In this document: positions 2,691 through 62,901 of the stretch, in pieces | Numbering within the stretch: the stretch's first letter is position 1 | Layout of the letters: every line of letters starts with the position of its first letter | From: Octopus sinensis | Taxonomy: Eukaryota | Direction of reading: 5' to 3' | Length of the DNA stretch: 64,000 bases | Assembly: GCF_006345805.1 (NCBI RefSeq) | Contig: NC_043000.1 | Location: forward strand, 134,540,001-134,604,000 | Made by a program: the position numbers and the translations under genes | Notes under the pieces: generated by a model | What the model saw: the letters and a program-made list of their open reading frames with translations, nothing else | Told to the model about the DNA's origin: nothing | The model's database searches: none

Positions 2691-3392
2691 TAGATATATC
2701 TTTTAAGACCCAGGTCTTAAGAAAGTTTTTTATTTTTCCCTTTTCTAATCAAGCTCCAGTGTTTGAAGAAAATCCAAAGACGAATTTCAAATGAAAAAAA
2801 CCTTTTAATTTCAACTAAAAAAATAAGGAAAACACATACACAAATATATATGAATATATACAGGATCTATCTTCCTCCTACAAGGTGACATTACTATTGT
2901 TGGTGCCATGGAAAAATGCATTCAGTAAACAGAATCCAAGCCTACACTGAGACATTCAAGCTTATATATATATATCATCATCATCATCATCGTTTAGCGT
3001 CCGTTTTCCATGCTAGCATGGGTTGGACGGTTCAACTGGGGTCTGTGAAGCCAGAAGGCTTCATCAGGCCCAGTCAGATCTGGCAGTGTTTCTATGGCTG
3101 GATGCCCTTCCTAACGCCAACCATTCCGTGAGTGTAGTGGGTGCTTTTTACGTGCCACCCGCACAGGTGCCAGACAGAGCTGGCAAATGGCCATGAACGG
3201 ATGGTGCTTTTTATGTGCCACCGGCACGGGGGCCAGGCGAGGCTGGCAATGGACACGAACGGATGGTGCTTTTTACGTGCCACAGGCAATAGGCCAGTCG
3301 GGGCGGCACTGGCAACAGTCATGAATGGATGGTTCTCTTACATGCCACCGGCACTGGTAACACATCTGCAATTTCCATTGATCGATTTCGAT

Positions 3393-4026: not shown

Positions 4027-4530
4027 TCATCATCATCATCATCATCATCATTTAACGTTCGCTTTCCATGCTAGCATGGGTTGGACGGTTCAACTGGGGT
4101 CTGGGGAGCCCGAAAGCTGCACCAGTCCAGTCAGATCTGGCAGTGTTTCTACAGCTGGATGCCCTTCCTAACGCCAACCACTCCGAGAGTGTAGTGGGTG
4201 ATTTTATGTGCCACCAACACAGGTGCCAGACGAGGCTGGCAAACGGCCACGCTCGGATGGTGTTTTATATGTGCCACCGACACAGGTGCCAGACGAGGCT
4301 GGCAGATGGCCACGCTCGGATGGTGTTTTTATGTGCCACCGACACAGGTGCCAGATGAGGCTGGCAAACGGCCACGATCGGATGGTGTTTGTTACGTGCC
4401 CACAGCACGGAGGCCAGTCGATGCGGTACTGGCTACGGCCACGTTCGTATGGTTTTCTTGTGTGCCACGTGCCACCAGCACTGGTACCACAAAGATACAA
4501 ATTCCATTGATGTTCATCTATTTTGATTTG
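4027..4530 (-). mobile_element. Family D copy with expanded ~63-bp internal repeats
   Basis: GTGCCACC.ACACAGGTGCCAGA.GAGGCTGGCA unit repeated. Confidence 0.85.
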
Positions 4531-26929: not shown

Positions 26930-28400
26930 CTATGACTTCCTATTCCACAGTTTATATCTATTTAGCTTGCTTGACACCTCTTTACTTGTCATCGTCTACA
27001 CACATCACATGCTCCATGATCATACTAGTGCAGTTTTCTCTCTTTCAAACTACAGCTGATTCTTCTTACATTCAGTTTTTCTCTCGCCTCATATGACCTC
27101 CACAGTTCATGCATGCTGACATTACACATCCAGCAGAATGTCTTTACCTCATTTCTAACTCTTGAACATCCACTGCATTCAAGATCTTTTTTTGCTACTA
27201 TGCAATATCATACATCATACAGAAACATCGCACAATCTACCTACCCCTCACTTGAATAGAGGACCCTGTGGTTGCCAACAGATATGTCTCCCTGAATTTT
27301 TTCCACCCTGTTTCTTACTCTGGCTACTAAGATTCTGAAACACTCAACTACATCACTAATTAGGTACTCTAGACAATGGAAGCTTTCTACTACTTCTAGA
27401 GAGCCGTCTAGAATTTAAGATATATTTCATAGGTGTTCTAACTGCTAACTATTTCTGTGCACTGTTACAATGAAGGCCCCCTTCTTTGTAAGCCTGCTTA
27501 TGCATCACTTATGCACCCATAATTTACAGTTTAAGAGTTCCTACTTACAGTGAGCAAGTGTTTGCTAGGGATCAGTTTTCAGTCCACTCCAATTCATCAT
27601 AGTTCTCCAAGCTATAATAGAGGTGTTTAAGACTGGGTGCCCAAGGAAACTCCTCTATGCTGATGACTTTGTTCTTATAGCTGAAGCTGTAGTAGATTTA
27701 GAAAACAAATTCCAGGTGTGGAAGTAAAACCTTAAATCAAAGGGCCTTACAGTTAACTTAGTAAAAACCAAAGTTTTAGTAAGCAGGAAAACAGACATGA
27801 TGCTACTCCCATCAGGAAACAGGCCCCTATTACTGTACACCTCTTCCCTCACACTATCTCCCTATTTTTCATCTATATAGTTGCATTACAATGCTGCTTG
27901 GCTCCCCACTTTTTGTACTGTCACTTACCTCCTCCACCCTGACCCACTCTTATTTCCTACAACTGTAGTTACCAAACTAAGAAACAGACATCGGTGGCTC
28001 TCCATCTTGGCACAAATGTGAAGCATATCTCATCTAACCTAATTTTCTTCCTAATTAGCTGTGCTATCTTTTTCTAATTTTTACGACTTGGTCCGTTAAT
28101 TTAATGCCTCTGATCAAAATGCCATCAATTTCAAAAGCTGGTCCCTCTACTGAGCCTACTTGAGTCTCTCTCTCTCTTGTGTATTCTCTTTATTCAGCAA
28201 CCCCTCCATAGTAGCATTTCCATGCCTCTTTCTTTAGCATCAGTGAGGTCAAATAACTTGTTAGCATTACTGATATACTTTTTACCAATGTTGTCTTAAC
28301 GTCTGTGATCCTCTCATCACTACTCAAAGCAGATTGTCACAGAGTAACTCTTACTTGTCTACCCTTCCCTTCTTGACATGTGCACGATCTAGTACTTCTT
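26930..28400 (-). mobile_element. Decayed RTE-clade LINE (ORF2) with an inverted internal segment
   Basis: Minus strand gives KEAWKCYY..LLNKEN, DQVVKI..AQLIRKKIRLDE, VSRNS..KLWVHK and LEVVESF. Plus strand 27551-27830 gives GCPRKLLYADDFVLIAE..KSKGLTVNLVKTKVLVS (YADD at 27656-67). Confidence 0.85.
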
Positions 28401-28601
28401 TGCACTTACGTTTGATCAAGGGATATTTCAGTTTCTATATTTTTCTTCTTTGGATAGTCTTGCATTTCTAGGTCAGTCTGCTTTGAGCCTGATGTCAATG
28501 AGTATTTTTTACATATCTCACAAACACCACAATTTTATATATAATATAATAATGAAATTATTGTATACAGTGCTCAGGTGCACCACAACAAAATAATGCT
28601 G

Positions 28602-28670
28602 GGGCTCGTCTGGGATTCGAACCCGGGACCTCTTGCACCCAAAGCAAGAATCATACCCCTAGACCAACGA
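28602..28670 (-). pseudogene. tRNA-Pro(TGG) retrocopy, lacking the first 3 nt
   Basis: Minus strand reads TCGTTGGTCTAGGGGTATGATTCTTGCTTTGGGTGCAAGAGGTCCCGGGTTCGAATCCCAGACGAGCCC, near-identical to the conserved metazoan tRNA-Pro. Anticodon TGG; one T-stem mismatch; flanked by a TSD. Confidence 0.9.
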
Positions 28671-29709
28671 ACAATTTTATCCTAAAATAATATAACAAAT
28701 TCACAGACCTACATGCTAAACATTACAGGATTCCCCCTAACTAGTGTCATCTTCCTTCCCCTTAAAAGAAACGTTAACTTGATGATTGAAATTATTACTA
28801 CATAGACATCCCATAATCCCTATACAATTCTTTATCTCACGCTGGTATGTGCAGCCTGGTATTCACCTAGGTGTAAGCGCGGTAAAATTTGGAGGGAAAA
28901 AAAAGGTAGCTTGCACCTAGTTATTCAGTTGACTACCTGAATGTCACATATCTGCTTAATCGGAGCTAACCTGGGGCTACACGTGACAATGCACAGAGAC
29001 GCATATGCGCACATGCACACACACACACATTACAGATTATAGATTAAACTTAACAGTTAATATAAGATTAAATTCAGCAGTTAATTTCAAAAGAGATTAC
29101 AGTTTTAACCTGTTAGCAATAACTCTAAATTCAAAATATATATATTTTTACTGATATTTCCTTTCATGAAATCTAATTTAAAATATATCTAGGCCATTTG
29201 TCACATTAAAGATACAACGATTACTTATAACCCCAACTTTTTTTTTCTATAATTCAAACAGTAATTATCACAAATTTAATCTCAACATACATAGCTAATA
29301 ATGATGATGATTTCATATTTTGGTATGGGGCCAATAATTTTTGAGGAGAAGATCAAGTTGATTACATTGACCCCAGCACTTGACTGGTACTTATTTTATC
29401 GACCCTGAAACGATGAGAGGCAAAGTCAACCTTAGCAGAATTTGAACTCAGATCGCAACAAGATGCCACGAAGCAATAATGATTTTGCTAGCTTGCTGCC
29501 TTAATTGTTTCAAATTTCTGCACAATGCCAGTAATTTTAAGGGACAGGTAAGTCAATTACAGCAACACTAGCACTTAACAAATATTTTATTTTATTAAGG
29601 GTGAAAGGTAAAAGCTGACCTCAGCAGTATTTGAACTCAGAAGGCAATGAGCCTGAAGAGATGCTGCTTTAGCATTTCTCTAAGGTGCTAACAATTCGGG
29701 CAATTCACT

Positions 29710-29927
29710 TTCTTCTTCTTCTTCTTAATAATAATGATGGTGATGATGATGATGATAATAATAATAATAATAAAAAGAAGGGGAGGAGGAGGCAGCAGCA
29801 ACAGAAGAAGAAGAAGAAGAAGAAGAAGAAGAAGAAGAAGAAGAAGAAGAAGAAGAAGAAGAAGAAGAAGAAGAAGAAGAAGAAGAAGAAGAAGAAGAAG
29901 AAGAAGAAGAAGAAGAAGAAGAAGAAG
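29710..29927 (+). repeat. Compound microsatellite (CTT)n-(GAT)n-(AAT)n-(GAA)~40
   Basis: Seen directly. Confidence 0.95.
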
Positions 29928-30168
29928 AGTCAAAGTGTTGGTCACACACTTGTTGAACTATAAATATATAACTTATTTACAGTGCTGCCATTTTCAAGCT
30001 AAGCAAATACAACGACTTAGACAAAGTCAGGTTCATCATTATGAAGTTGATATATATAAAACAAACCAGCTTCAAAAACCTGCAATCACTTGAAAGAAAG
30101 CATGCTAAAACACAATAAAGAATGGTGATAAAGAAAAAAAAAAACTTCTACATAGAATTCTACAGGCA

Positions 30169-44330: not shown

Positions 44331-46471
44331 ACAGTGAAGTAAGAGGTTAATTGATAGGAGGAGTGGTAAGAATAAATAAATAAATAAATAATATGTCGAA
44401 GGAAGAGGAAGAGAAGGAAATGGTGGGAGGGAGGAGGGGGGCAGAGAAAGAAAGCATGAAAAATTAGAAGGCGTTCAAATTGATATAGGTGATAGTGATA
44501 TCGGATGTTGTTAACAAATGGGCAAAGTAAAAGTATGAAAGAATAGTAGAGGAAGAAGAAAAGATTATTAGAAATACACCGGGGAGGGGGGGGGGTAAAA
44601 GCAAGTGAAAGTGTATTAGGATTAGTGTGAGAGCGAGGCTGTATTATTTTTTTTTTATCTTTCTCCTTAATGCAAAGGAGATATACAGATACGTATGCGT
44701 ACACGTATGTGTATTAGATATAACCAAATTCCCTCCGTGGACTCAAACGTATTAACCCTATTCTCTTGACTTGATATCACTACAAACATATATCTATACG
44801 CAATTATGCACATACTATTGTAATCATTTATATAGTCTTATATCGAACGAAGAGGGTTTAAATCTTTGTTGTCAGTCTTGTCGGCTATAAGTATACTGCG
44901 GACATCAGTTTTAAAAGCTCTCGTACATCTGCGCTGGACGCTTGAAAGATGCTAGCGGCAATCGAACCTGCTTGGTAATTATTATTTACTGATCGTGTGT
45001 AGCCTCTTATTACACTTCATCGTCGAGAAGTTTGTTAATGGTACAAAAACAGTTCCGATTTTAAAAGATTGAGATAAATTATTACCCTCTGTTTAAAAGT
45101 TGATAGAACACAATGACCAAATTAAAACACGCGGATATAAAAGCTAGTGATGATCAATACGCAGTGGGTCGAGTGCATTTATTTATTTTCTGTATCATAA
45201 TCTCTAAGTAACTGGCTGCATAGTATCTGTTAAATGATCTACCGCAGTGGTTGTGGCGGTAACTTTTCAATGAACACAGACAAATCTAGTTATATTAGAA
45301 ACTATAGGGGTCTTTTCCCTTTCAACGGCAGATTGAGAAATAAATTTTTTCCAACTATAGCTGCTTCTATCATGTTTTAAAAGAAAAACACTTTTTCCTT
45401 TATCATTATATATATTTTTAAAGCCGCGTACAATCCCCCACTACTGCTTAACGACCGGTGTTGGTGTGTTTACGTCTCCGTAACGCAGGGGTTCAGCGAA
45501 AAAAAGAACGATAAAAAAAATAGGAACTGGGGTCGATCAGTTCAACTAAAATTCTTCAATGCGGTACACCCGCATAGTGCACCTGAGTACTTGATACAAC
45601 AATTTCATTATATTATAAGTAAATATGGCGACAAGCTGGCAGAAACGTTAGCACGCAGGGCGAAATGCTTAGCAGTAGTTCGTTCGTCTTTACGTTCTGA
45701 GTTCAAATTCCGCCGAGGTCGACTTTGCCTTTCATCCTTTCGGGGTCGATAAGTTAAGTACCAGTTACGTCCTGGGGTCGATCTAATCGACTGGCTCCCC
45801 CCCCCCCCAAAAAAAAAAATTTCTTACCTTGTGCCTAGAGTAGAAAAGATTATTATAAGTAAATGAACCGGTTATAATTACATTTATCGAAATCAGAAAA
45901 CGAAGAGAAGATAAAAGGGTTTTCCATAACACGGACAATTGCAACTTGTTGAAACTATAATATTATCAAGTAACACTTGTGTCTCCCACATAAAAGGTCT
46001 ATCATGAAATAGTCAAGATCGTATTCACTGGGCATAAGAACTTATCCGAATATACAAGCTTCGTTAATTTCTACTGGCGAAAACCACCTCTTGATTTTGG
46101 GGCTTATTTTTTCACTTTACATTCTCCCCCCACCCCATTATAACTGTTATAACATATCTAGGGGAGATAAGTACTAAACTATTTGAACTATAACCTATTG
46201 TGTCGGGAGGGCCACGACACAGATTAACTTTTATTATGTAAACCACTTCGTGGTTAACAGGTTTACAACGTATCACCCATGGTTTACAATTCATTTCTAA
46301 CTGCGGGAGTGTCTAACTCGGTGTAAAACAAATATTCCAGGGATTTTCACTCGAAGAACACTCTTCTTGGTTTTCCCGCCAATATTTGTATCTGATACTT
46401 GTCGACGAAAGATGCGCACCATATGCGTGAATATATGCATATTCCGACAGACAAAGAAATTTAGTCCATTC

Positions 46472-52636: not shown

Positions 52637-53055
52637 GGCGGCGAGCTGGCAGAAACGCTAGCACGCCGGACGAAATGCTTAGCAGTATTTCGTCTGCCGC
52701 TACGTTCTGAGTTCAAATTCCGCCGAGGTCGACTTTGCCTTTCATCCTTTCGGGGTCGATTAAATAAGTACCAGTTACGCACTGGGGTCGATATAATCGA
52801 CTTAATCCCTTTGTCTGTCCTTGTTTGTCCCCTCTGTGTTTAGCCCCTTGTGGGTAGTAAAGAAATAGGTATTTCGCCTGCCGCTACGTTCTGAGTTAAA
52901 ATTCCGCCGAGGTCGACTTTGCCTTTCATCCTTTCGGGGTCGATTAAATAAGTACCAGCTACGCGCTGGAGTCGGTATAATCGACTTAATCCGTTTGTCC
53001 GTCCTTATTTGACCTCTCCGTGTTTAGCCCCTTGTGGGTAGTAAAGAAATAGGTA
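52637..53055 (+). mobile_element. SINE family B with a tandem 3' duplication
   Basis: Body repeated at ~52869-53053. Confidence 0.85.
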
Positions 53056-55911
53056 TGGTACATCTGCCAACACGTTTCACTTCCAAGGTAAAGCTCAACC
53101 CGATGCTATAGAAAATGACATTTATCCAAGACTGAACTTGGAATCTCGTTGCTGCGAAGTGAACTTCTTAAACATTTATCCATACTGCACGTACGTACGT
53201 ACACACACACACATAATTTACTTTATCAACCACAGAAGAACTCCTCAGCAGAAGCAACATGACGGATGTACATTTTAGGCTGAAGAATTAATTGAGCAAT
53301 GATCAGCGCTGAAACTGACAAGATGATAGATCACTATCACCAAGTTCCAAAATTGAACTACTGTTAACATCTGTAAAGCTGGTGACCATGTGTAATTAAA
53401 CTATTTAATATGACTGATCTGAAATATATAAGTGCAAAGATAAGTACGAAAAGTACAACACAAAGGAAAATAAACCCAGAGTCAATATTAGTTTGGCACT
53501 CAGAAAATCTTTTCTACTCTAGGCACAAGGCCCGAAATTTTTGGAGGAGGGGGCCAGTCGATTAGATCGACACCAGTATGCAACTGGTACTTAATTTATC
53601 GACCCCGAAAGGATGAAAGGCAAAGCCGACCTCGGCAGAATTTCAGAAATGGAAAGACGTGATTAATCTTTTCTTTGGCACTCAGAAAATGGTGGGGGGA
53701 AAAGGAAATGCCTTTAACATTTCGATTACACACTCTTCTTCTAAAAAATAGGATAGAGATGGAGAGAAAAGATTGGAAAAGGAAATCTGAAGGGCTTTTC
53801 CATAGACATTTTATTTTTGTGAAAGCAAATATACTTTGATTTTCATAAAATATTTTGAGAGCAATTCAATAGGTAGAGGAGGTAAGATTTGTGAAAGTGT
53901 CCACCCAAAGTAAGTGCAAATGTTGTCTCTTCCCATACACCAGCAAGAAATTTACTATCTTATCCACGTCTGCTCTTAAACCACTCACCTGCTATAAGTA
54001 ACTAAAATTATTGAGAATTTAAAACAAACGTCGAGTACGACGTATAGTTAACAAAGGTTTCAACACAACGTAAATGATAGTTATGATCTTTTCCTTTTGA
54101 TATTTAAGAGATATGGCTGTTCTTTCTAGCACATGCCAACACGACCTTCCTCGTTTGTTTATCAATATCGATAACGCAGCAAATGATTTCAGCTCAAAAG
54201 AGAGCATACGATTGGTTAAAATTCGAAAAATTAAACTACGTTAAACAAACGAATTACAAATTTATCAAAAAAGCCAAGTGAAAATAATGTTTTCTTTTGA
54301 CACATTCTACCAGTATACGAAGTTTCAAACTGTTTAGTTAACTAGATATTGTGTTGAATTCTGTCTAGCAAAAGGAAAAGATCCTGATGTCTATGTACCA
54401 TATAAGAATATCGCAATAATGCATAACCGATTCGTCATTTATTGTATCGTTTATTTCGGGACTAACCATGAAAGATACAGCATTTTGTAACCAATAAAAA
54501 GTGCTAACCCAGAAAGTCTTTGTAAAAGGTTTCCATAATGCCGTTGTCTCCTTTTTCGAGAGTAGAGTGGAATGGAACAATTTAGAGCGATTTGGTATGT
54601 GATAAAGTAACTTGCCGACCGTTTTGAGGCAGTTGAAGTAGGAAGTGGAAAATGCAACTAACTGTACATTTTCCCACATTTACTGCAAACTGCCGGCAAG
54701 TTGCTTACCACTCGCATATCCTGAATCACTCAAAAATTGCCATTCACTATTCTTCTGTGAATAGCAAATTGGGAATAATGGCCAGTAGAGATCCATTAGC
54801 GAGAATTCCTTTTAATAGCTTTGAAACATATAGCGTTATATAAATTTCAGGAAACAAAAACAAACCACAACGCAAACGCATTTGTTTGCTGGAAAACGCT
54901 TAAATGAGTTAATAAAGAACAATTGAAAGTTGCATGGCAGAAGAGCTAGAAATCATGGTTGGAGCAAACGCGATTATACAAATTAGTTTAGCGCAGCATA
55001 TTCGTAATTGCAAGTTTAGTATTATTCCCTTATTTAAAAGCTGAACATATTGATTACTTATAATCGAGACAATGCTATAATATTTAGGGGGAAGGCATTC
55101 AATTCAATGTGAATCCCTTTCTGTATATATTATTTGTACATATTTTATCGATTTCAGAAGGGTGAGAAGTTAAGTAAACCCCAACAGAATTTGAACATTT
55201 GAACACAACACTTTACCAGCTATATTGTGCCAGTTACAATCCTCCAAAAATATTTAGATTACTTAAAAATTCTAAGGTCTAAAATAAATTAGGGAGCTTA
55301 ACTAAAAAATATTTTTTCTGTGAACTTTTTCATAGTAGCAAATAGTAATTCCAGCAATAACAGTTTGTTTAGTTTAATAACTGATAAGTTCTAAGTTCAT
55401 ATCTGCGCCAGTATTTCGATTTTTTTTTTTTCTGAACGTAATTTTTAAACCAATGAATAGTACATACACTAATACTAAGAAGCAACAATAACAATATTTA
55501 CATTAAGCCTTTAATATAAGAAACAAGGCGGCAAGCTGTCAGAATCGTTAGCATGCCGGATAAAATGCTTAGCTGCAGTTCATCCGTCTTTATGTTTTGA
55601 GTTCAAATTCCGCCGAGGTCGACTTTGTCTTCGATCCCTTTCGGAGTCGATAAAATAAGTACCAGTTGAACTGGGCGTTGATGTAATCGACTTAATCCCC
55701 ACCCGAAATTGCTGACTTGTGCGAAAATCTGAAACCAAGACTTTTATTAAACATTTAATATAAGGCGCAGAACCATGTTGCTTGCTTCCCAGCCACATGG
55801 TTCTGGGTTAAGTCCCACTGCGTGATACTTTGGACACGTATTCTCTACTATAGCCTGGGGCCGACGAAAGCATTGTGAGTGGATTTGGTTGACGGAAACT
55901 TTTTAGATATT

Positions 55912-56990
55912 CCGAGGCGGCCTGGATCACCATTTCTAGGCCCTGTCCTTGCCAATTTCTCGTCGGCGCTCTTTTTGCCTGGAGGACTACAATCTGGTCC
56001 TCCACACCAAGTAGGATGGTGGCTATGAGCCAAGCAACATACACCTCAGGAGGGATCTCATCTACCCTTGAGAAGAAGGCAATTTGCTTTAATATGGCCC
56101 TTCTTTCTGCAGTGGTAGCATGTGGGAGGTATTCCCTCCACTACCACACGCTGCTTCACATCCTCTGGCAACTGTATTTCTTCAGTTATCTCTTGTAAGT
56201 CTAGTGTGGTGGCCTGGTTTATGACTTCTAGGCCATATCCCCATCAATTCAGCTGTTTAGTGCGGCTTACCTGCAGCACATGAAGGTCATCTTTCCTGTC
56301 TATTAGGATAGCTGCTAGTAGCCACACCTCGTTGATCTCTGTGGGTACCTTGCCAATCCTCACTCTCGCTACTCGTTTCCCGGGATAAGTTAGCAGGAGT
56401 GCCCATTTTCCTGTTTTCAAGGTTACAGTGGAGTGCTTTGCTGCCTCCTCCACAGTCGGAAAGCGGACCTCCACTGTACCAAACTTCCTTCCTCCACAGT
56501 AGAATTCGATGTTACTTATCTCTTTCAAGAATTCTTCCAAATCTTCCTCTTTCGCCATTTCTATTTTCTTATTCGCCAGTAAAAGGGTTCTGTAGACCAC
56601 TGTTTTTTTCGGTTTTTGCTTCTTGTTATCTCTTCCCGCGGCATCAATTTCAACCTTGACTCTTCTCTTTGTAACAATCTTTTACTGTTCTTCACTATCT
56701 CGAAGTCCACAGGTACCTCCCTGACTTCCTGCTGTCTCACAGTCGCAGCAATATTATCACGGCCTGCTACTGAAGCGTAGCTCCCGGCACGCGCTTGCAA
56801 TTCCTCCATGCTCACTGTAATTTTCGCCCCCACTGGGGGAGAAAACACAACAAGTTAAACAATTATCAACAAGAGATAACCCCGCTAGGGAGGACCTTAA
56901 ACCAAGGATAACCTATCCGCAACGATACGAAAACAATACAATCTCTTCGAAAAGATGATTGGAACAACGGTGAAAAAGTATGAATGTTAA
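55912..56990 (-). mobile_element. Non-LTR retrotransposon 5' portion: 5'UTR plus disrupted gag-like ORF1 (RRM-like region and CCHC knuckle); no ORF2
   Basis: ATG at 56809, one frameshift near 56600, in-frame TGA at 56244-46; CYHCRKKGHIKANC at 56120-56079. Confidence 0.8.
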
Positions 56991-61530: not shown

Positions 61531-62175
61531 GGAGTGGCTGTGTGGTAAGTAGCTTGTTTACCAACCACATGGTTCCGGGTTCAGTCCCACTGCGTGCAAC
61601 CTTGGGCAAGTGTCTTCTACTATAGCCTCGGGCCGACCAAAGCCTTGTGAGTGGATTTGGTAGACGGAAACTGAAAGAAGCCCGTCGTATATATATGTGT
61701 GTGTGTGTTTGTGTTTGTCCCCCTAGAATTGCTTGACAACCGATGCTGGTGTGTTTATGTCCCCGTTACCTATGATACATTAAAAACAGGAGTAGCTGTG
61801 TGGTAAGTAGCTTGTTTACCAACCACATGGTTCCGGGTTCAGTCCCACTGCGTGGCACCTTGGGCAAGTGTCTTCTACTATAGGCTCGGGCCGACCAAAG
61901 CCTTGTGAGTGGATTTGGTAGACGGAAACTGAAAGAAACCCGTCGTATATATGTATGCGTGTGTGTGTGTGTGTTTGTGTTTGTCCCCCTAGAATTGCTT
62001 GACAACCGATGCTGGTGTGTTTATGTCCCCGTTACCTAGCGGTTCGGCAAAAGAGAACCGATAGAATAAGTACTGGGCTTACAAAAGAATAAGTCCCGGG
62101 GTCGAGTTGCTCGATTAAAGGCGTTGCTCCAGCATGGCCGCAGTCAAATGACTGAAACAAGTAAAAGAGTAAAGA
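61529..62175 (+). mobile_element. SINE family A with a tandem partial duplication
   Basis: Two heads, each preceded by CTATGATACATTAAAAA. Confidence 0.9.
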
Positions 62176-62901
62176 GAATTATAATGTACATCAGTGAGTT
62201 TGATTATGAGCTCTTCTGTAGTTTTTCTTCTTTTTTTCTCAATATAATGAGCCTAAGAAACACTAGGTTACAAATATCGGACAAAGGACTCTCAATATCG
62301 ATGCAAAATTCAATAATTATATTCAAGCGAAATGCTAGTTGAATGTGACTTCGAAGTCTCGCCATTAGCAACATGTCAGTGTGTGTGTGTACAATCTTTT
62401 ATTTGTTTCATTCATTACACTGGGGCCATGCTAGGGTACTGCTTTGAAGGGCTTCAGTCGAACAAATTGATCCCAGTATTTTATTGATACTTTATTAATC
62501 GACACCATAAACTTTTTTTAAAGTTTGGTATTTATCTCTCTCTTTTGATGTACTGATAAATTACAATACCTATTTCTTTATTACCCACAAGGGGCTAAAC
62601 ATAGAAGGGACAAACAAGGACAGACATAGGTATTAAGTCGATTACATCGGCCCCAGTGCGTAACTGGTATATAATTTATCGACCCCGAAAGGATGAAAGG
62701 CAAAGTCGACCTCGGCGGAATTTGAACTCAGAACGTAACGCAGACGAAATACCGCTAAGCAAAAATTACAATACCGGTCGTGTGTGTATATATATAATTC
62801 TTTTATTTTTTTTACTTGTTTCAGTCATTTGACTGCGGCCATGCTGAGCAGCGCCTTAAAAATCGTTTTTAGCCGAAGAAATCGACTCCAGGATTCATTC
62901 T

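What the first reader, a model, noticed from the sequence alone, without database searches (positions are those of the whole stretch)
28529..28680. tRNA-Pro / LINE-tail chimeric retrocopy, a possible nascent SINE
Seen (minus strand): tRNA-Pro(TGG) from nt 4 to the end, then CAGCATTATTTT, then GTTGTGGTGCACCTGAGCACTGTATACAATAATTTC and an ATT-type tail. The whole is bracketed by a perfect 10-bp TSD (ACAATTTTAT at 28529-38 and 28671-80). Established: U6/L1-type chimeras arise when a Pol III RNA ending in oligo-U is joined to a LINE 3' end, and SINEs are tRNA-head/LINE-tail fusions. Inference: a pre-tRNA with its trailer was captured (only 4 C then A, one short of mature CCA, so a mature tRNA origin cannot be excluded). 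It still has both internal promoter boxes.
Basis: partly seen in the sequence, partly recalled or inferred. Interest (0 to 1): 0.7.

Follow-up and report, generated by a model that had tools for sequence, protein, structure and literature searches.

The report
tRNA-Pro fused to retroposon tail, retrocopied
This is a real one-off retrocopy in which an unprocessed proline tRNA transcript was joined to the last ~60 bases of a mobile element and inserted in a single event; that is the expected raw material for a new SINE, but nothing shows that this copy ever multiplied.

Summary
From 5' to 3' the element has four parts:
- tRNA-Pro(TGG) from nt 4 to the discriminator base
- a 12-nt trailer, CAGCATTATTTT
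- a 36-nt unique block
- a 15-nt AT-rich simple tail

A perfect 10-bp direct repeat brackets the whole element; neither half has a repeat of its own.

New evidence: the 3' block is a mobile 3' end. The window holds a second, oppositely oriented copy (31 of 35 bases identical, nhmmer E about 1e-12). It ends a SINE copy at 45.4-45.6 kb, and that SINE's relatives in the window carry a different tail.

The trailer ends in TTTT exactly at the junction, as expected for a primary Pol III transcript. The best explanation is therefore that a reverse transcriptase started on the tail RNA and switched to a pre-tRNA-Pro.

"Nascent SINE" is not supported:
- the TTTT terminator lies between head and tail
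- the tRNA part is degraded (Rfam 39.7 bits against 56.7 for genuine genes)
- no second copy of the junction was found

However, no searchable collection holds the host genome. Copy number, the partner LINE, the source gene and the empty site all remain untested. This is a new member of a known kind, of moderate interest.

The parts
28671..28680 (-). 5' copy of the target-site duplication, ATAAAATTGT
   Evidence: One of only two occurrences in the window. It ends exactly where tRNA homology starts.
28602..28670 (-). tRNA-Pro(TGG), nt 4 to the discriminator base. The first three nt (GGC) are missing. It differs at 4 positions from canonical animal tRNA-Pro(TGG): C29T and G41A (which compensate each other), A57G, and G64A (which leaves pair 50-64 unpaired).
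   Evidence: ARAGORN; Rfam 39.7 bits against 56.7 bits for genuine genes; alignment A1.
28590..28601 (-). 12-nt 3' trailer CAGCATTATTTT, ending in TTTT (28593-28590), a Pol III terminator, directly at the junction with the tail
   Evidence: Genuine tRNA-Pro genes in L001 and L002 have trailers of the same length and style: GTGCATAATTTTT and TAACATTTTTT. The sequence is not CCA.
28554..28589 (-). Unique part of the retroposon 3' end, GTTGTGGTGCACCTGAGCACTGTATACAATAATTTC. It contains a small hairpin, GGTGC-ACCTGA-GCACT.
   Evidence: Positions 28583-28549 match 45577-45611 at 31 of 35 bases.
28539..28553 (-). AT-rich simple terminal tail, ATTATTATATTATAT
   Evidence: The other copy ends ATTATATTATAAG. 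The shared part is TTTCATTAT, followed by variable AT-rich sequence.
28529..28538 (-). 3' copy of the target-site duplication, ATAAAATTGT
45566..45618 (+). Second copy of the same 3' end in the window (comparison sequence, not part of the insertion). It forms the 3' end of a SINE copy spanning about 45421-45624, whose relatives in the window carry a different tail.
   Evidence: blastn, 35 nt at 88.6%, E 2e-7; nhmmer E 8e-13; sequence; family comparison.

Best explanation
This is a dead-on-arrival chimeric retrocopy made in one target-primed reverse transcription event.

Proposed sequence of events:
1. A LINE endonuclease nicked the site ...TTTTAGG/ATAAAATTGT/GGTG....
2. The reverse transcriptase (RT) began on an RNA carrying its cognate 3' end. 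That RNA was a LINE, or a SINE that borrows the same tail: ...GTGCACCTGAGCACTGTATACAATAATTTC plus AT-rich repeats.
3. After copying about 50-60 nt, the RT switched template to the 3' end of a primary, unprocessed Pol III transcript of a tRNA-Pro(TGG) gene. That transcript ended in its terminator oligo-U.
4. The RT copied it up to nt 4, and the cDNA was joined to the other side of the staggered break, leaving a 10-bp duplication.

Shown directly: the anatomy, the single TSD, the independent existence of the tail as a retroposon 3' end, and the non-CCA, T-run-ended trailer.

Inferred: the template switch itself, the LINE origin of the enzyme and tail, and the identity of the source gene.

The copy keeps both promoter boxes, but the TTTT between head and tail would stop most Pol III transcripts before the tail. 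It is therefore poorly placed to found a SINE family.
For: - Only one pair of direct repeats exists, and it brackets tRNA plus tail. Its inner edges coincide with the start of tRNA homology and the end of the AT-rich tail. No repeat flanks the tRNA alone or the tail alone (read).
- The first 3 nt of the tRNA are replaced by flank, while the other 69 nt differ from genuine genes at only 4 positions. This fits 5' truncation of a cDNA, not decay of a resident gene.
- The tail recurs on the opposite strand 17 kb away as the terminal 40-50 nt of a SINE copy. That SINE's body belongs to a family that otherwise ends ...GGCGGTGCTCCAGCATGGCCGCAGTCAAATGACTGAAACAAGTAAAAGA. So the tail is a transferable 3' module.
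- The small hairpin stays pairable in both copies through one-sided changes (G-U to A-U, G-C to G-U).
- The segment between tRNA and tail is not CCA. It ends in TTTT at the junction and looks like real tRNA-Pro trailers.
- A neighbouring SINE has a 13-bp TSD, so 10-13 bp is normal for the local retroposition machinery.
- Literature: stringent LINE clades (L2, RTE) make U6 chimeras only by template switching, and this was proposed as the route by which LINE tails reach tRNA sequences (PMC4476161). The PittSINE birth scenario is the same event (PMC5729268).
Against: - No LINE with this tail was seen, and the window has no RT-coding LINE.
- Only two copies of the tail are available, so family status rests on one comparison.
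- The source tRNA-Pro gene with trailer CAGCATTATTTT was not found.
- The 6 nt GTTGTG between the T-run and the block shared with the second copy cannot be assigned with certainty.
- A read-through transcript from a locus where the tail already lay behind the tRNA gene would give the same product. So would RNA ligation before reverse transcription.
- No empty orthologous site could be examined.
Confidence: 0.6

Rival explanations
1. DNA-level fusion first. At the source locus, a 5'-truncated copy of the tail-bearing retroposon had inserted just behind a tRNA-Pro gene's terminator. Pol III read through the weak TTTT, and the resulting tRNA-trailer-tail RNA was recognised by the LINE machinery and retroposed as one RNA.
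For: The product would be identical to what is seen. A run of four T is the minimal terminator and is leaky (established knowledge of Pol III termination). Genuine genes in L001 and L002 use T5-T6. In this window, retroposons do land in AT- or T-rich ends of other elements.
Against: It needs two events plus read-through. It also needs the earlier insertion to lie within 0-6 nt of the terminator in the right orientation. No such source locus was found, but the host genome could not be searched.
Confidence: 0.15
2. This is one 5'-truncated member of an existing, probably low-copy, tRNA-Pro-headed SINE family, or the family's founder.
For: It has the head-plus-tail architecture of a simple SINE, both promoter boxes are intact, and an AT-rich TATA-like sequence lies upstream. 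The genome could not be searched, so copy number is unknown.
Against: There is a TTTT between head and tail. There is one copy in 64 kb, whereas the window's real SINE families each have 8-15 copies. None of the 120 hits whose sequences were read, out of 221 antisense tRNA-Pro ORFs found in the protein collection, carries this trailer or tail. The head is almost identical to a bona fide tRNA, unlike the window's established SINE heads.
Confidence: 0.12
3. RNA ligation before reverse transcription. A cellular RNA ligase (RtcB-type) joined the pre-tRNA 3' end to a 5'-OH fragment of the tail-bearing RNA, and the ligated RNA was then retroposed.
For: This mechanism was demonstrated for U6/L1 chimeras (PMC6789731, abstract seen). 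It would give a sharp junction at the RNA's 3' end, as seen.
Against: That route relies on a 2',3'-cyclic phosphate end, which is characteristic of U6. Primary pre-tRNA transcripts end in 3'-OH oligo-U (established knowledge). Nothing in the sequence separates this from template switching.
Confidence: 0.08
4. Two unrelated neighbours and a chance repeat: a decayed resident tRNA-Pro gene with its own terminator, next to an independently inserted tail fragment, with the 10-bp repeat arising by coincidence.
For: About 1% of positions in this repeat-rich window have a perfect 10-mer repeated within 300 nt.
Against: The repeat's inner edges coincide with both element boundaries. Three of the first three tRNA nt differ, against 4 of the next 69. 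No TSD surrounds the tail alone. The 10-mer is not simple sequence and occurs nowhere else in the window.
Confidence: 0.03

Closest known systems
U6/LINE chimeric retrocopies made by template switching (U6/L1 in mammals; U6/L2 and U6/RTE in other vertebrates; PMC4476161)
   Same: A Pol III RNA, copied from its natural oligo-U 3' end, is fused head-to-tail to a 5'-truncated LINE-type 3' end. One TSD surrounds the pair. Stringent LINE clades produce only this chimera form.
   Different: The 5' partner here is a pre-tRNA with its trailer, not U6. The 3' partner is only about 50-60 nt and ends in AT-rich simple sequence, not poly(A). The host is a non-vertebrate-looking genome, and the LINE is unidentified.
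PittSINE birth scenario (tRNA-Asp joined to the CR1 tail of TguSINE1 by template switching; PMC5729268)
   Same: The proposed event is the same: an RT copying a SINE or LINE tail jumps to a tRNA, giving a tRNA-tail chimera flanked by a TSD.
   Different: PittSINE is known only as an amplified family, and its founding event is inferred. Here a single insertion is seen, with no evidence of amplification and with a terminator inside it.
tRNA/L1 chimeric insertions in primate genomes (bioRxiv 10.1101/2025.02.02.635956)
   Same: tRNA sequence and a LINE 3' part lie within one TSD (21 loci, TSDs of 9-19 bp).
   Different: Those are mostly tRNA halves in antisense orientation, attributed to twin priming. 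This one is nearly full length, in sense orientation, and carries the precursor trailer.
tRNA-derived SINEs with LINE-derived tails (for example the octopus OR1/OR2/OK families and CORE-SINEs; PMC4824008, PMC5786205)
   Same: A tRNA-type head with A and B boxes, plus a tail shared with another retroposon.
   Different: It has no body, shows no evidence of multiple copies, and has an internal TTTT between head and tail. The head is a near-exact tRNA rather than a diverged tRNA-like sequence.

Membership tests
LINE-mediated template-switch chimeric retrocopy | Two unrelated RNA-derived parts in the same orientation: the 5' part a small Pol III RNA, the 3' part the 3' end of a LINE or SINE | tested here: met
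   The tRNA-Pro part is identified by ARAGORN, Rfam and alignment. The 3' part recurs as the 3' end of a SINE copy. A LINE origin for the tail is not shown.
LINE-mediated template-switch chimeric retrocopy | One target-site duplication round the pair and none at the internal junction | tested here: met
   A perfect 10-bp repeat sits at the outer edges only. No repeat flanks either half.
LINE-mediated template-switch chimeric retrocopy | The 5' partner is copied from its natural RNA 3' end (oligo-U for primary Pol III transcripts) | tested here: met
   The trailer CAGCATTATTTT ends in T4 at the junction. Its form matches the trailers of genuine genes. The source gene itself was not found.
LINE-mediated template-switch chimeric retrocopy | An empty site exists in a related genome or haplotype | not testable with these tools
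   The host genome is absent from all searchable collections.
LINE-mediated template-switch chimeric retrocopy | An autonomous LINE in the same genome ends in the same tail | not testable with these tools
   There is no RT-coding LINE in the window, and pattern scans of the collections found nothing.
SINE (tRNA-headed, LINE-tailed) | Internal Pol III promoter (A and B boxes) in the head | tested here: met
   A box TGGTCTAGGGG and B box GGTTCGAATCC are present.
SINE (tRNA-headed, LINE-tailed) | The Pol III transcript reaches the tail (no terminator between head and tail) | tested here: not met
   TTTT lies at 28593-28590, between tRNA and tail. The next T4 on that strand is at 28136.
SINE (tRNA-headed, LINE-tailed) | Many dispersed copies with the same structure and different flanks | tested here: inconclusive
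   One copy in 64 kb. No junction-sharing sequence among the 120 tRNA-Pro antisense ORFs read (of 221 hits), and none in the DNA scans. However, the host genome is not in those collections.
Functional tRNA-Pro gene | Complete acceptor stem and cloverleaf with a normal covariance score | tested here: not met
   Nt 1-3 are replaced by flank, pair C50-A64 is broken, and the score is 39.7 bits against 56.7 for genuine genes.
Retrocopy of a mature tRNA (CCA-ended retropseudogene) | CCA follows the discriminator base directly | tested here: not met
   The sequence reads ...GAGCCC-CA-GCATTATTTT, one C short and followed by a terminator-ended trailer.

The most novel reading that the evidence does not exclude
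The locus is the founder or an early member of a young, lineage-specific tRNA-Pro SINE. In that case Pol III reads through the weak T4 often enough for the tail to be transcribed and recognised. The SINE copy at 45.4 kb, which carries the same foreign tail, would then show that this tail's reverse transcriptase is unusually prone to swapping 5' partners. The result would be SINE birth caught essentially at step one in an invertebrate genome.
Probability: 0.1. Interest if true: 0.6.

Novelty: new member of a known kind. Interest (0 to 1): 0.35.

Why it matters
SINEs are thought to arise when a LINE reverse transcriptase jumps from its own tail to a tRNA. That founding event is normally only inferred from families that have already amplified. 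This is a single, clean insertion that still shows the precursor trailer, the oligo-U junction and an intact TSD. It is a direct snapshot of that step. It indicates that the acceptor was a primary Pol III transcript rather than a mature tRNA. It also illustrates why most such products fail: the terminator ends up inside the element. It adds one example from outside vertebrates. It does not change the model.

Tried and rejected
Attempts to reach the host genome:
- Exact look-up of the two window ORFs that overlap the element found nothing on record.
- Degenerate tail pattern scans gave 0 hits in viral contigs, metagenome contigs and genome contigs.
- The tRNA-trailer junction 20-mer gave one hit in metagenome contigs (L003). 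It lies in a microbial-looking contig with no tRNA gene, so it is a chance match.
- A protein search with the 46-aa antisense frame spanning the whole element returned 221 hits. The 120 whose sequences were read are all ORFs over ordinary tRNA-Pro genes of various organisms, and none has the trailer or tail. Two were fetched (L001, L002) and served only as yardsticks.
- A protein search with the SINE-plus-tail frame of the 45.4 kb copy found no candidate.
- A protein search with the commonest SINE frame found one 543-nt metagenome contig (L004). The collections therefore essentially lack this genome.

Other checks:
- A stop-to-stop six-frame reading of the window for open frames of at least 70 aa, inspected by eye, showed no recognisable reverse transcriptase. 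A Pfam scan of the four least repeat-like frames gave nothing.
- Whole-tail folding is no better than shuffled sequence (z = -0.4). Only the 5-bp hairpin is shared by the two copies.

Readings rejected:
- A mature-tRNA origin, because there is no CCA and the trailer ends in a T-run.
- A resident tRNA gene, because nt 1-3 are replaced and the TSD edges fit the element.
- Two independent insertions, because there is no inner TSD.

The impression that the host is a cephalopod rests only on my memory of octopus-like SINEs with a CORE-like motif. It was not verified.

Full report
**Observation**

On the minus strand the sequence reads as follows:
- ATAAAATTGT (28680-28671)
- TCGTTGGTCTAGGGGTATGATTCTTGCTTTGGGTGCAAGAGGTCCCGGGTTCGAATCCCAGACGAGCCC (28670-28602)
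- CAGCATTATTTT (28601-28590)
- GTTGTGGTGCACCTGAGCACTGTATACAATAATTTC (28589-28554)
- ATTATTATATTATAT (28553-28539)
- ATAAAATTGT (28538-28529)

ARAGORN finds one tRNA in the whole window, tRNA-Pro with anticodon TGG, at this place. Rfam finds the same and nothing else in 64 kb. The 10-mer occurs only at these two positions. As a deliberately generous control, about 1% of all positions in this microsatellite-rich window have a perfect 10-mer repeated 69-300 nt downstream. Here, however, the repeat is not simple sequence, and its inner edges coincide with the independently defined ends of the element. The only correction is that the terminal tail is irregular AT-rich sequence rather than a clean ATT repeat.

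**The tRNA part**

I aligned it with three genuine tRNA-Pro(TGG) genes recovered from unrelated animal-derived contigs (L001, L002). Homology starts at tRNA nt 4 and runs to the discriminator base (alignment A1). Nt 1-3 (GGC) are replaced by TGT, the end of the direct repeat.

Within the 69 shared positions there are four differences:
- C29T and G41A, which compensate each other in the anticodon stem
- A57G in the T loop
- G64A, which leaves pair 50-64 unpaired

The Rfam score is 39.7 bits, against 56.7 for each genuine gene. This is a truncated, slightly decayed copy, not a working gene. The A box and B box are intact.

**The trailer**

After the discriminator C come C, A and GCATTATTTT. This is not CCA. 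The genuine genes have trailers of the same length and style that end in T5-T6 (GTGCATAATTTTT, TAACATTTTTT). The T-run is the Pol III terminator (established knowledge), and it abuts the tail. That is what one expects if the copied RNA was a primary transcript read from its very 3' end. I could not find the source gene.

**The tail**

This is the main new result. A blastn of the element against the window finds one other match, at 45577-45611 on the plus strand: 31 of 35 bases identical, E 2e-7. A profile of the two copies finds only these two, each at about E 1e-12.

The second copy is the terminal stretch of a SINE copy at about 45421-45624. The body of that SINE belongs to a family with at least nine other copies in the window. 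Where their 3' ends are present, those copies end in a different tail...GGCGGTGCTCCAGCATGGCCGCAGTCAAATGACTGAAACAAGTAAAAGA.

The block GTGCACCTGAG(C/T)ACT(GT/TG)ATACAA(T/C)AATTTCATTAT is therefore a transferable retroposon 3' end. In this window it is attached to two different 5' partners on opposite strands. Both copies then run into variable AT-rich sequence, as LINE-type termini do. A 5-bp hairpin (GGTGC/GCACT against AGTGC/GTACT) stays pairable through one-sided changes, but the tail as a whole does not fold better than shuffled sequence. The first 16 nt of the tail loosely resemble the start of the commoner tail, which hints at related partner LINEs. That is an inference only.

Just after the second copy's tail, another SINE has inserted with a 13-bp TSD (45612-45624 and 45852-45864). 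TSDs of 10-13 bp are therefore normal for the local machinery.

**Mechanism**

There is one TSD round the pair and none round either half. The 5' partner is truncated at its 5' end, and a natural RNA 3' end sits at the inner junction. Together these are the signature of a single retroposition event that copied two RNAs in succession.

The best-supported model is template switching during target-primed reverse transcription: the RT moves from the tail-bearing RNA to a pre-tRNA-Pro. Doucet et al. report that stringent LINE clades (L2, RTE) generate U6 chimeras only in this way. They note that the same process was proposed to transfer LINE tails to tRNAs and so create SINEs (PMC4476161). Suh et al. 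propose exactly this event for the birth of PittSINE (PMC5729268), and Kojima invokes it for head acquisition (PMC5786205).

Three alternatives cannot be excluded from this sequence:
- a read-through transcript from a source locus where the tail already lay behind the gene
- RNA ligation before reverse transcription, as shown for U6/L1 (PMC6789731)
- membership of a low-copy SINE family

Chance adjacency is unlikely.

**Nascent SINE?**

The element has the head-plus-tail layout of a simple SINE and keeps both promoter boxes. Several points count against it as a SINE founder:
- The TTTT at 28593-28590 lies between the promoter and the tail, and the next T4 on that strand is about 450 nt further on. 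Most Pol III transcripts would end before the tail that the RT must recognise. Four T is a weak terminator, so some read-through is possible (established knowledge).
- There is one copy in the window, whereas true SINE families here have 8-15 copies.
- None of the 120 tRNA-Pro antisense ORFs whose sequences were read, out of 221 found in the protein collection, carries the junction.

The idea is therefore unsupported but not excluded, because the host genome could not be searched.

**Limits**

No collection available here contains the host genome:
- window ORFs are not on record
- tail patterns give no hits
- translated SINE frames find nothing, or a single 543-nt contig

The one exception is that a repeat ending in this tail has now been shown to exist. 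The window has no RT-coding LINE. The host looks to me like a cephalopod, from memory of octopus-type SINEs. That is unverified, and nothing in the argument depends on it.

**Comparison and verdict**

This works like a U6/LINE-type template-switch chimera, and it meets every feature of that class that could be tested. It is not a functional tRNA gene or a mature-tRNA retrocopy. It fails one defining feature of a SINE, because the transcript would not normally reach the tail.

The tRNA/L1 chimeras recently reported in primates are mostly antisense tRNA halves (bioRxiv 10.1101/2025.02.02.635956). A sense, near-full-length pre-tRNA joined to a non-L1-type tail is a less common variety. It is a new member of a known kind, of moderate interest as a clean snapshot of the step from which SINEs are thought to arise.

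Noticed in passing
window 45612-45624 and 45852-45864 (SINE at 45625-45851): A 13-bp direct repeat, ATTATAAGTAAAT, flanks a SINE of an abundant family (other copies near 58.4k, 52.6k, 2.5k, 62.7k, 50.8k, 7.9k). This SINE landed in the AT-rich end of the tail-bearing element, so it is a nested insertion with a clear TSD.
   Followed up: yes
window 45421-45624 (+): This SINE copy has a body belonging to the window's main SINE family but carries the foreign tail instead of the family's usual ...GCAGTCAAATGACTGAAACAAGTAAAAGA end. It may itself be a tail-swap chimera. No TSD could be defined for it.
   Followed up: partly
window 52685-53056: Two head-to-tail 184-bp units (93% alike) of the abundant SINE form a tandem SINE dimer.
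   Followed up: no
window 61646-62240: Two partial copies of the main SINE share private variants (for example ...TTATGTCCCCGTTACCTA...). This looks like a local duplication of about 266 bp rather than two insertions.
   Followed up: no
window 55811-56854 (-): Three consecutive non-repeat open frames (110, 145 and 97 aa) have no Pfam match below E 0.05. They may be the remnant of a transposable-element ORF.
   Followed up: partly
window 3140-3288 and 4197-4400: Tandem units of 62-63 bp lie inside a third repeat family. Its translated frames (containing ...QLDALPNANHSES/VSVVGAF...) recur near 13.6k, 18.7k, 20.9k and 22.1k.
   Followed up: no
window 29803-29928: A perfect (AGA)42 microsatellite. 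The window as a whole is dense in AT, AC and TA dinucleotide repeats.
   Followed up: no
L004 1-543 (ENA ERZ23499442, scaffold_285125): This metagenome contig carries SINE sequences 80-92% identical to those of the window. DNA of the same or a related host is therefore present in that sample.
   Followed up: partly
L003 2602-2621 (Ga0105048_10074140): An exact 20-mer match to the tRNA-trailer junction lies in a microbial-looking contig with no tRNA gene. It is a chance hit, and a reminder that 20-mers can recur by chance in a collection of 241 million records.
   Followed up: yes
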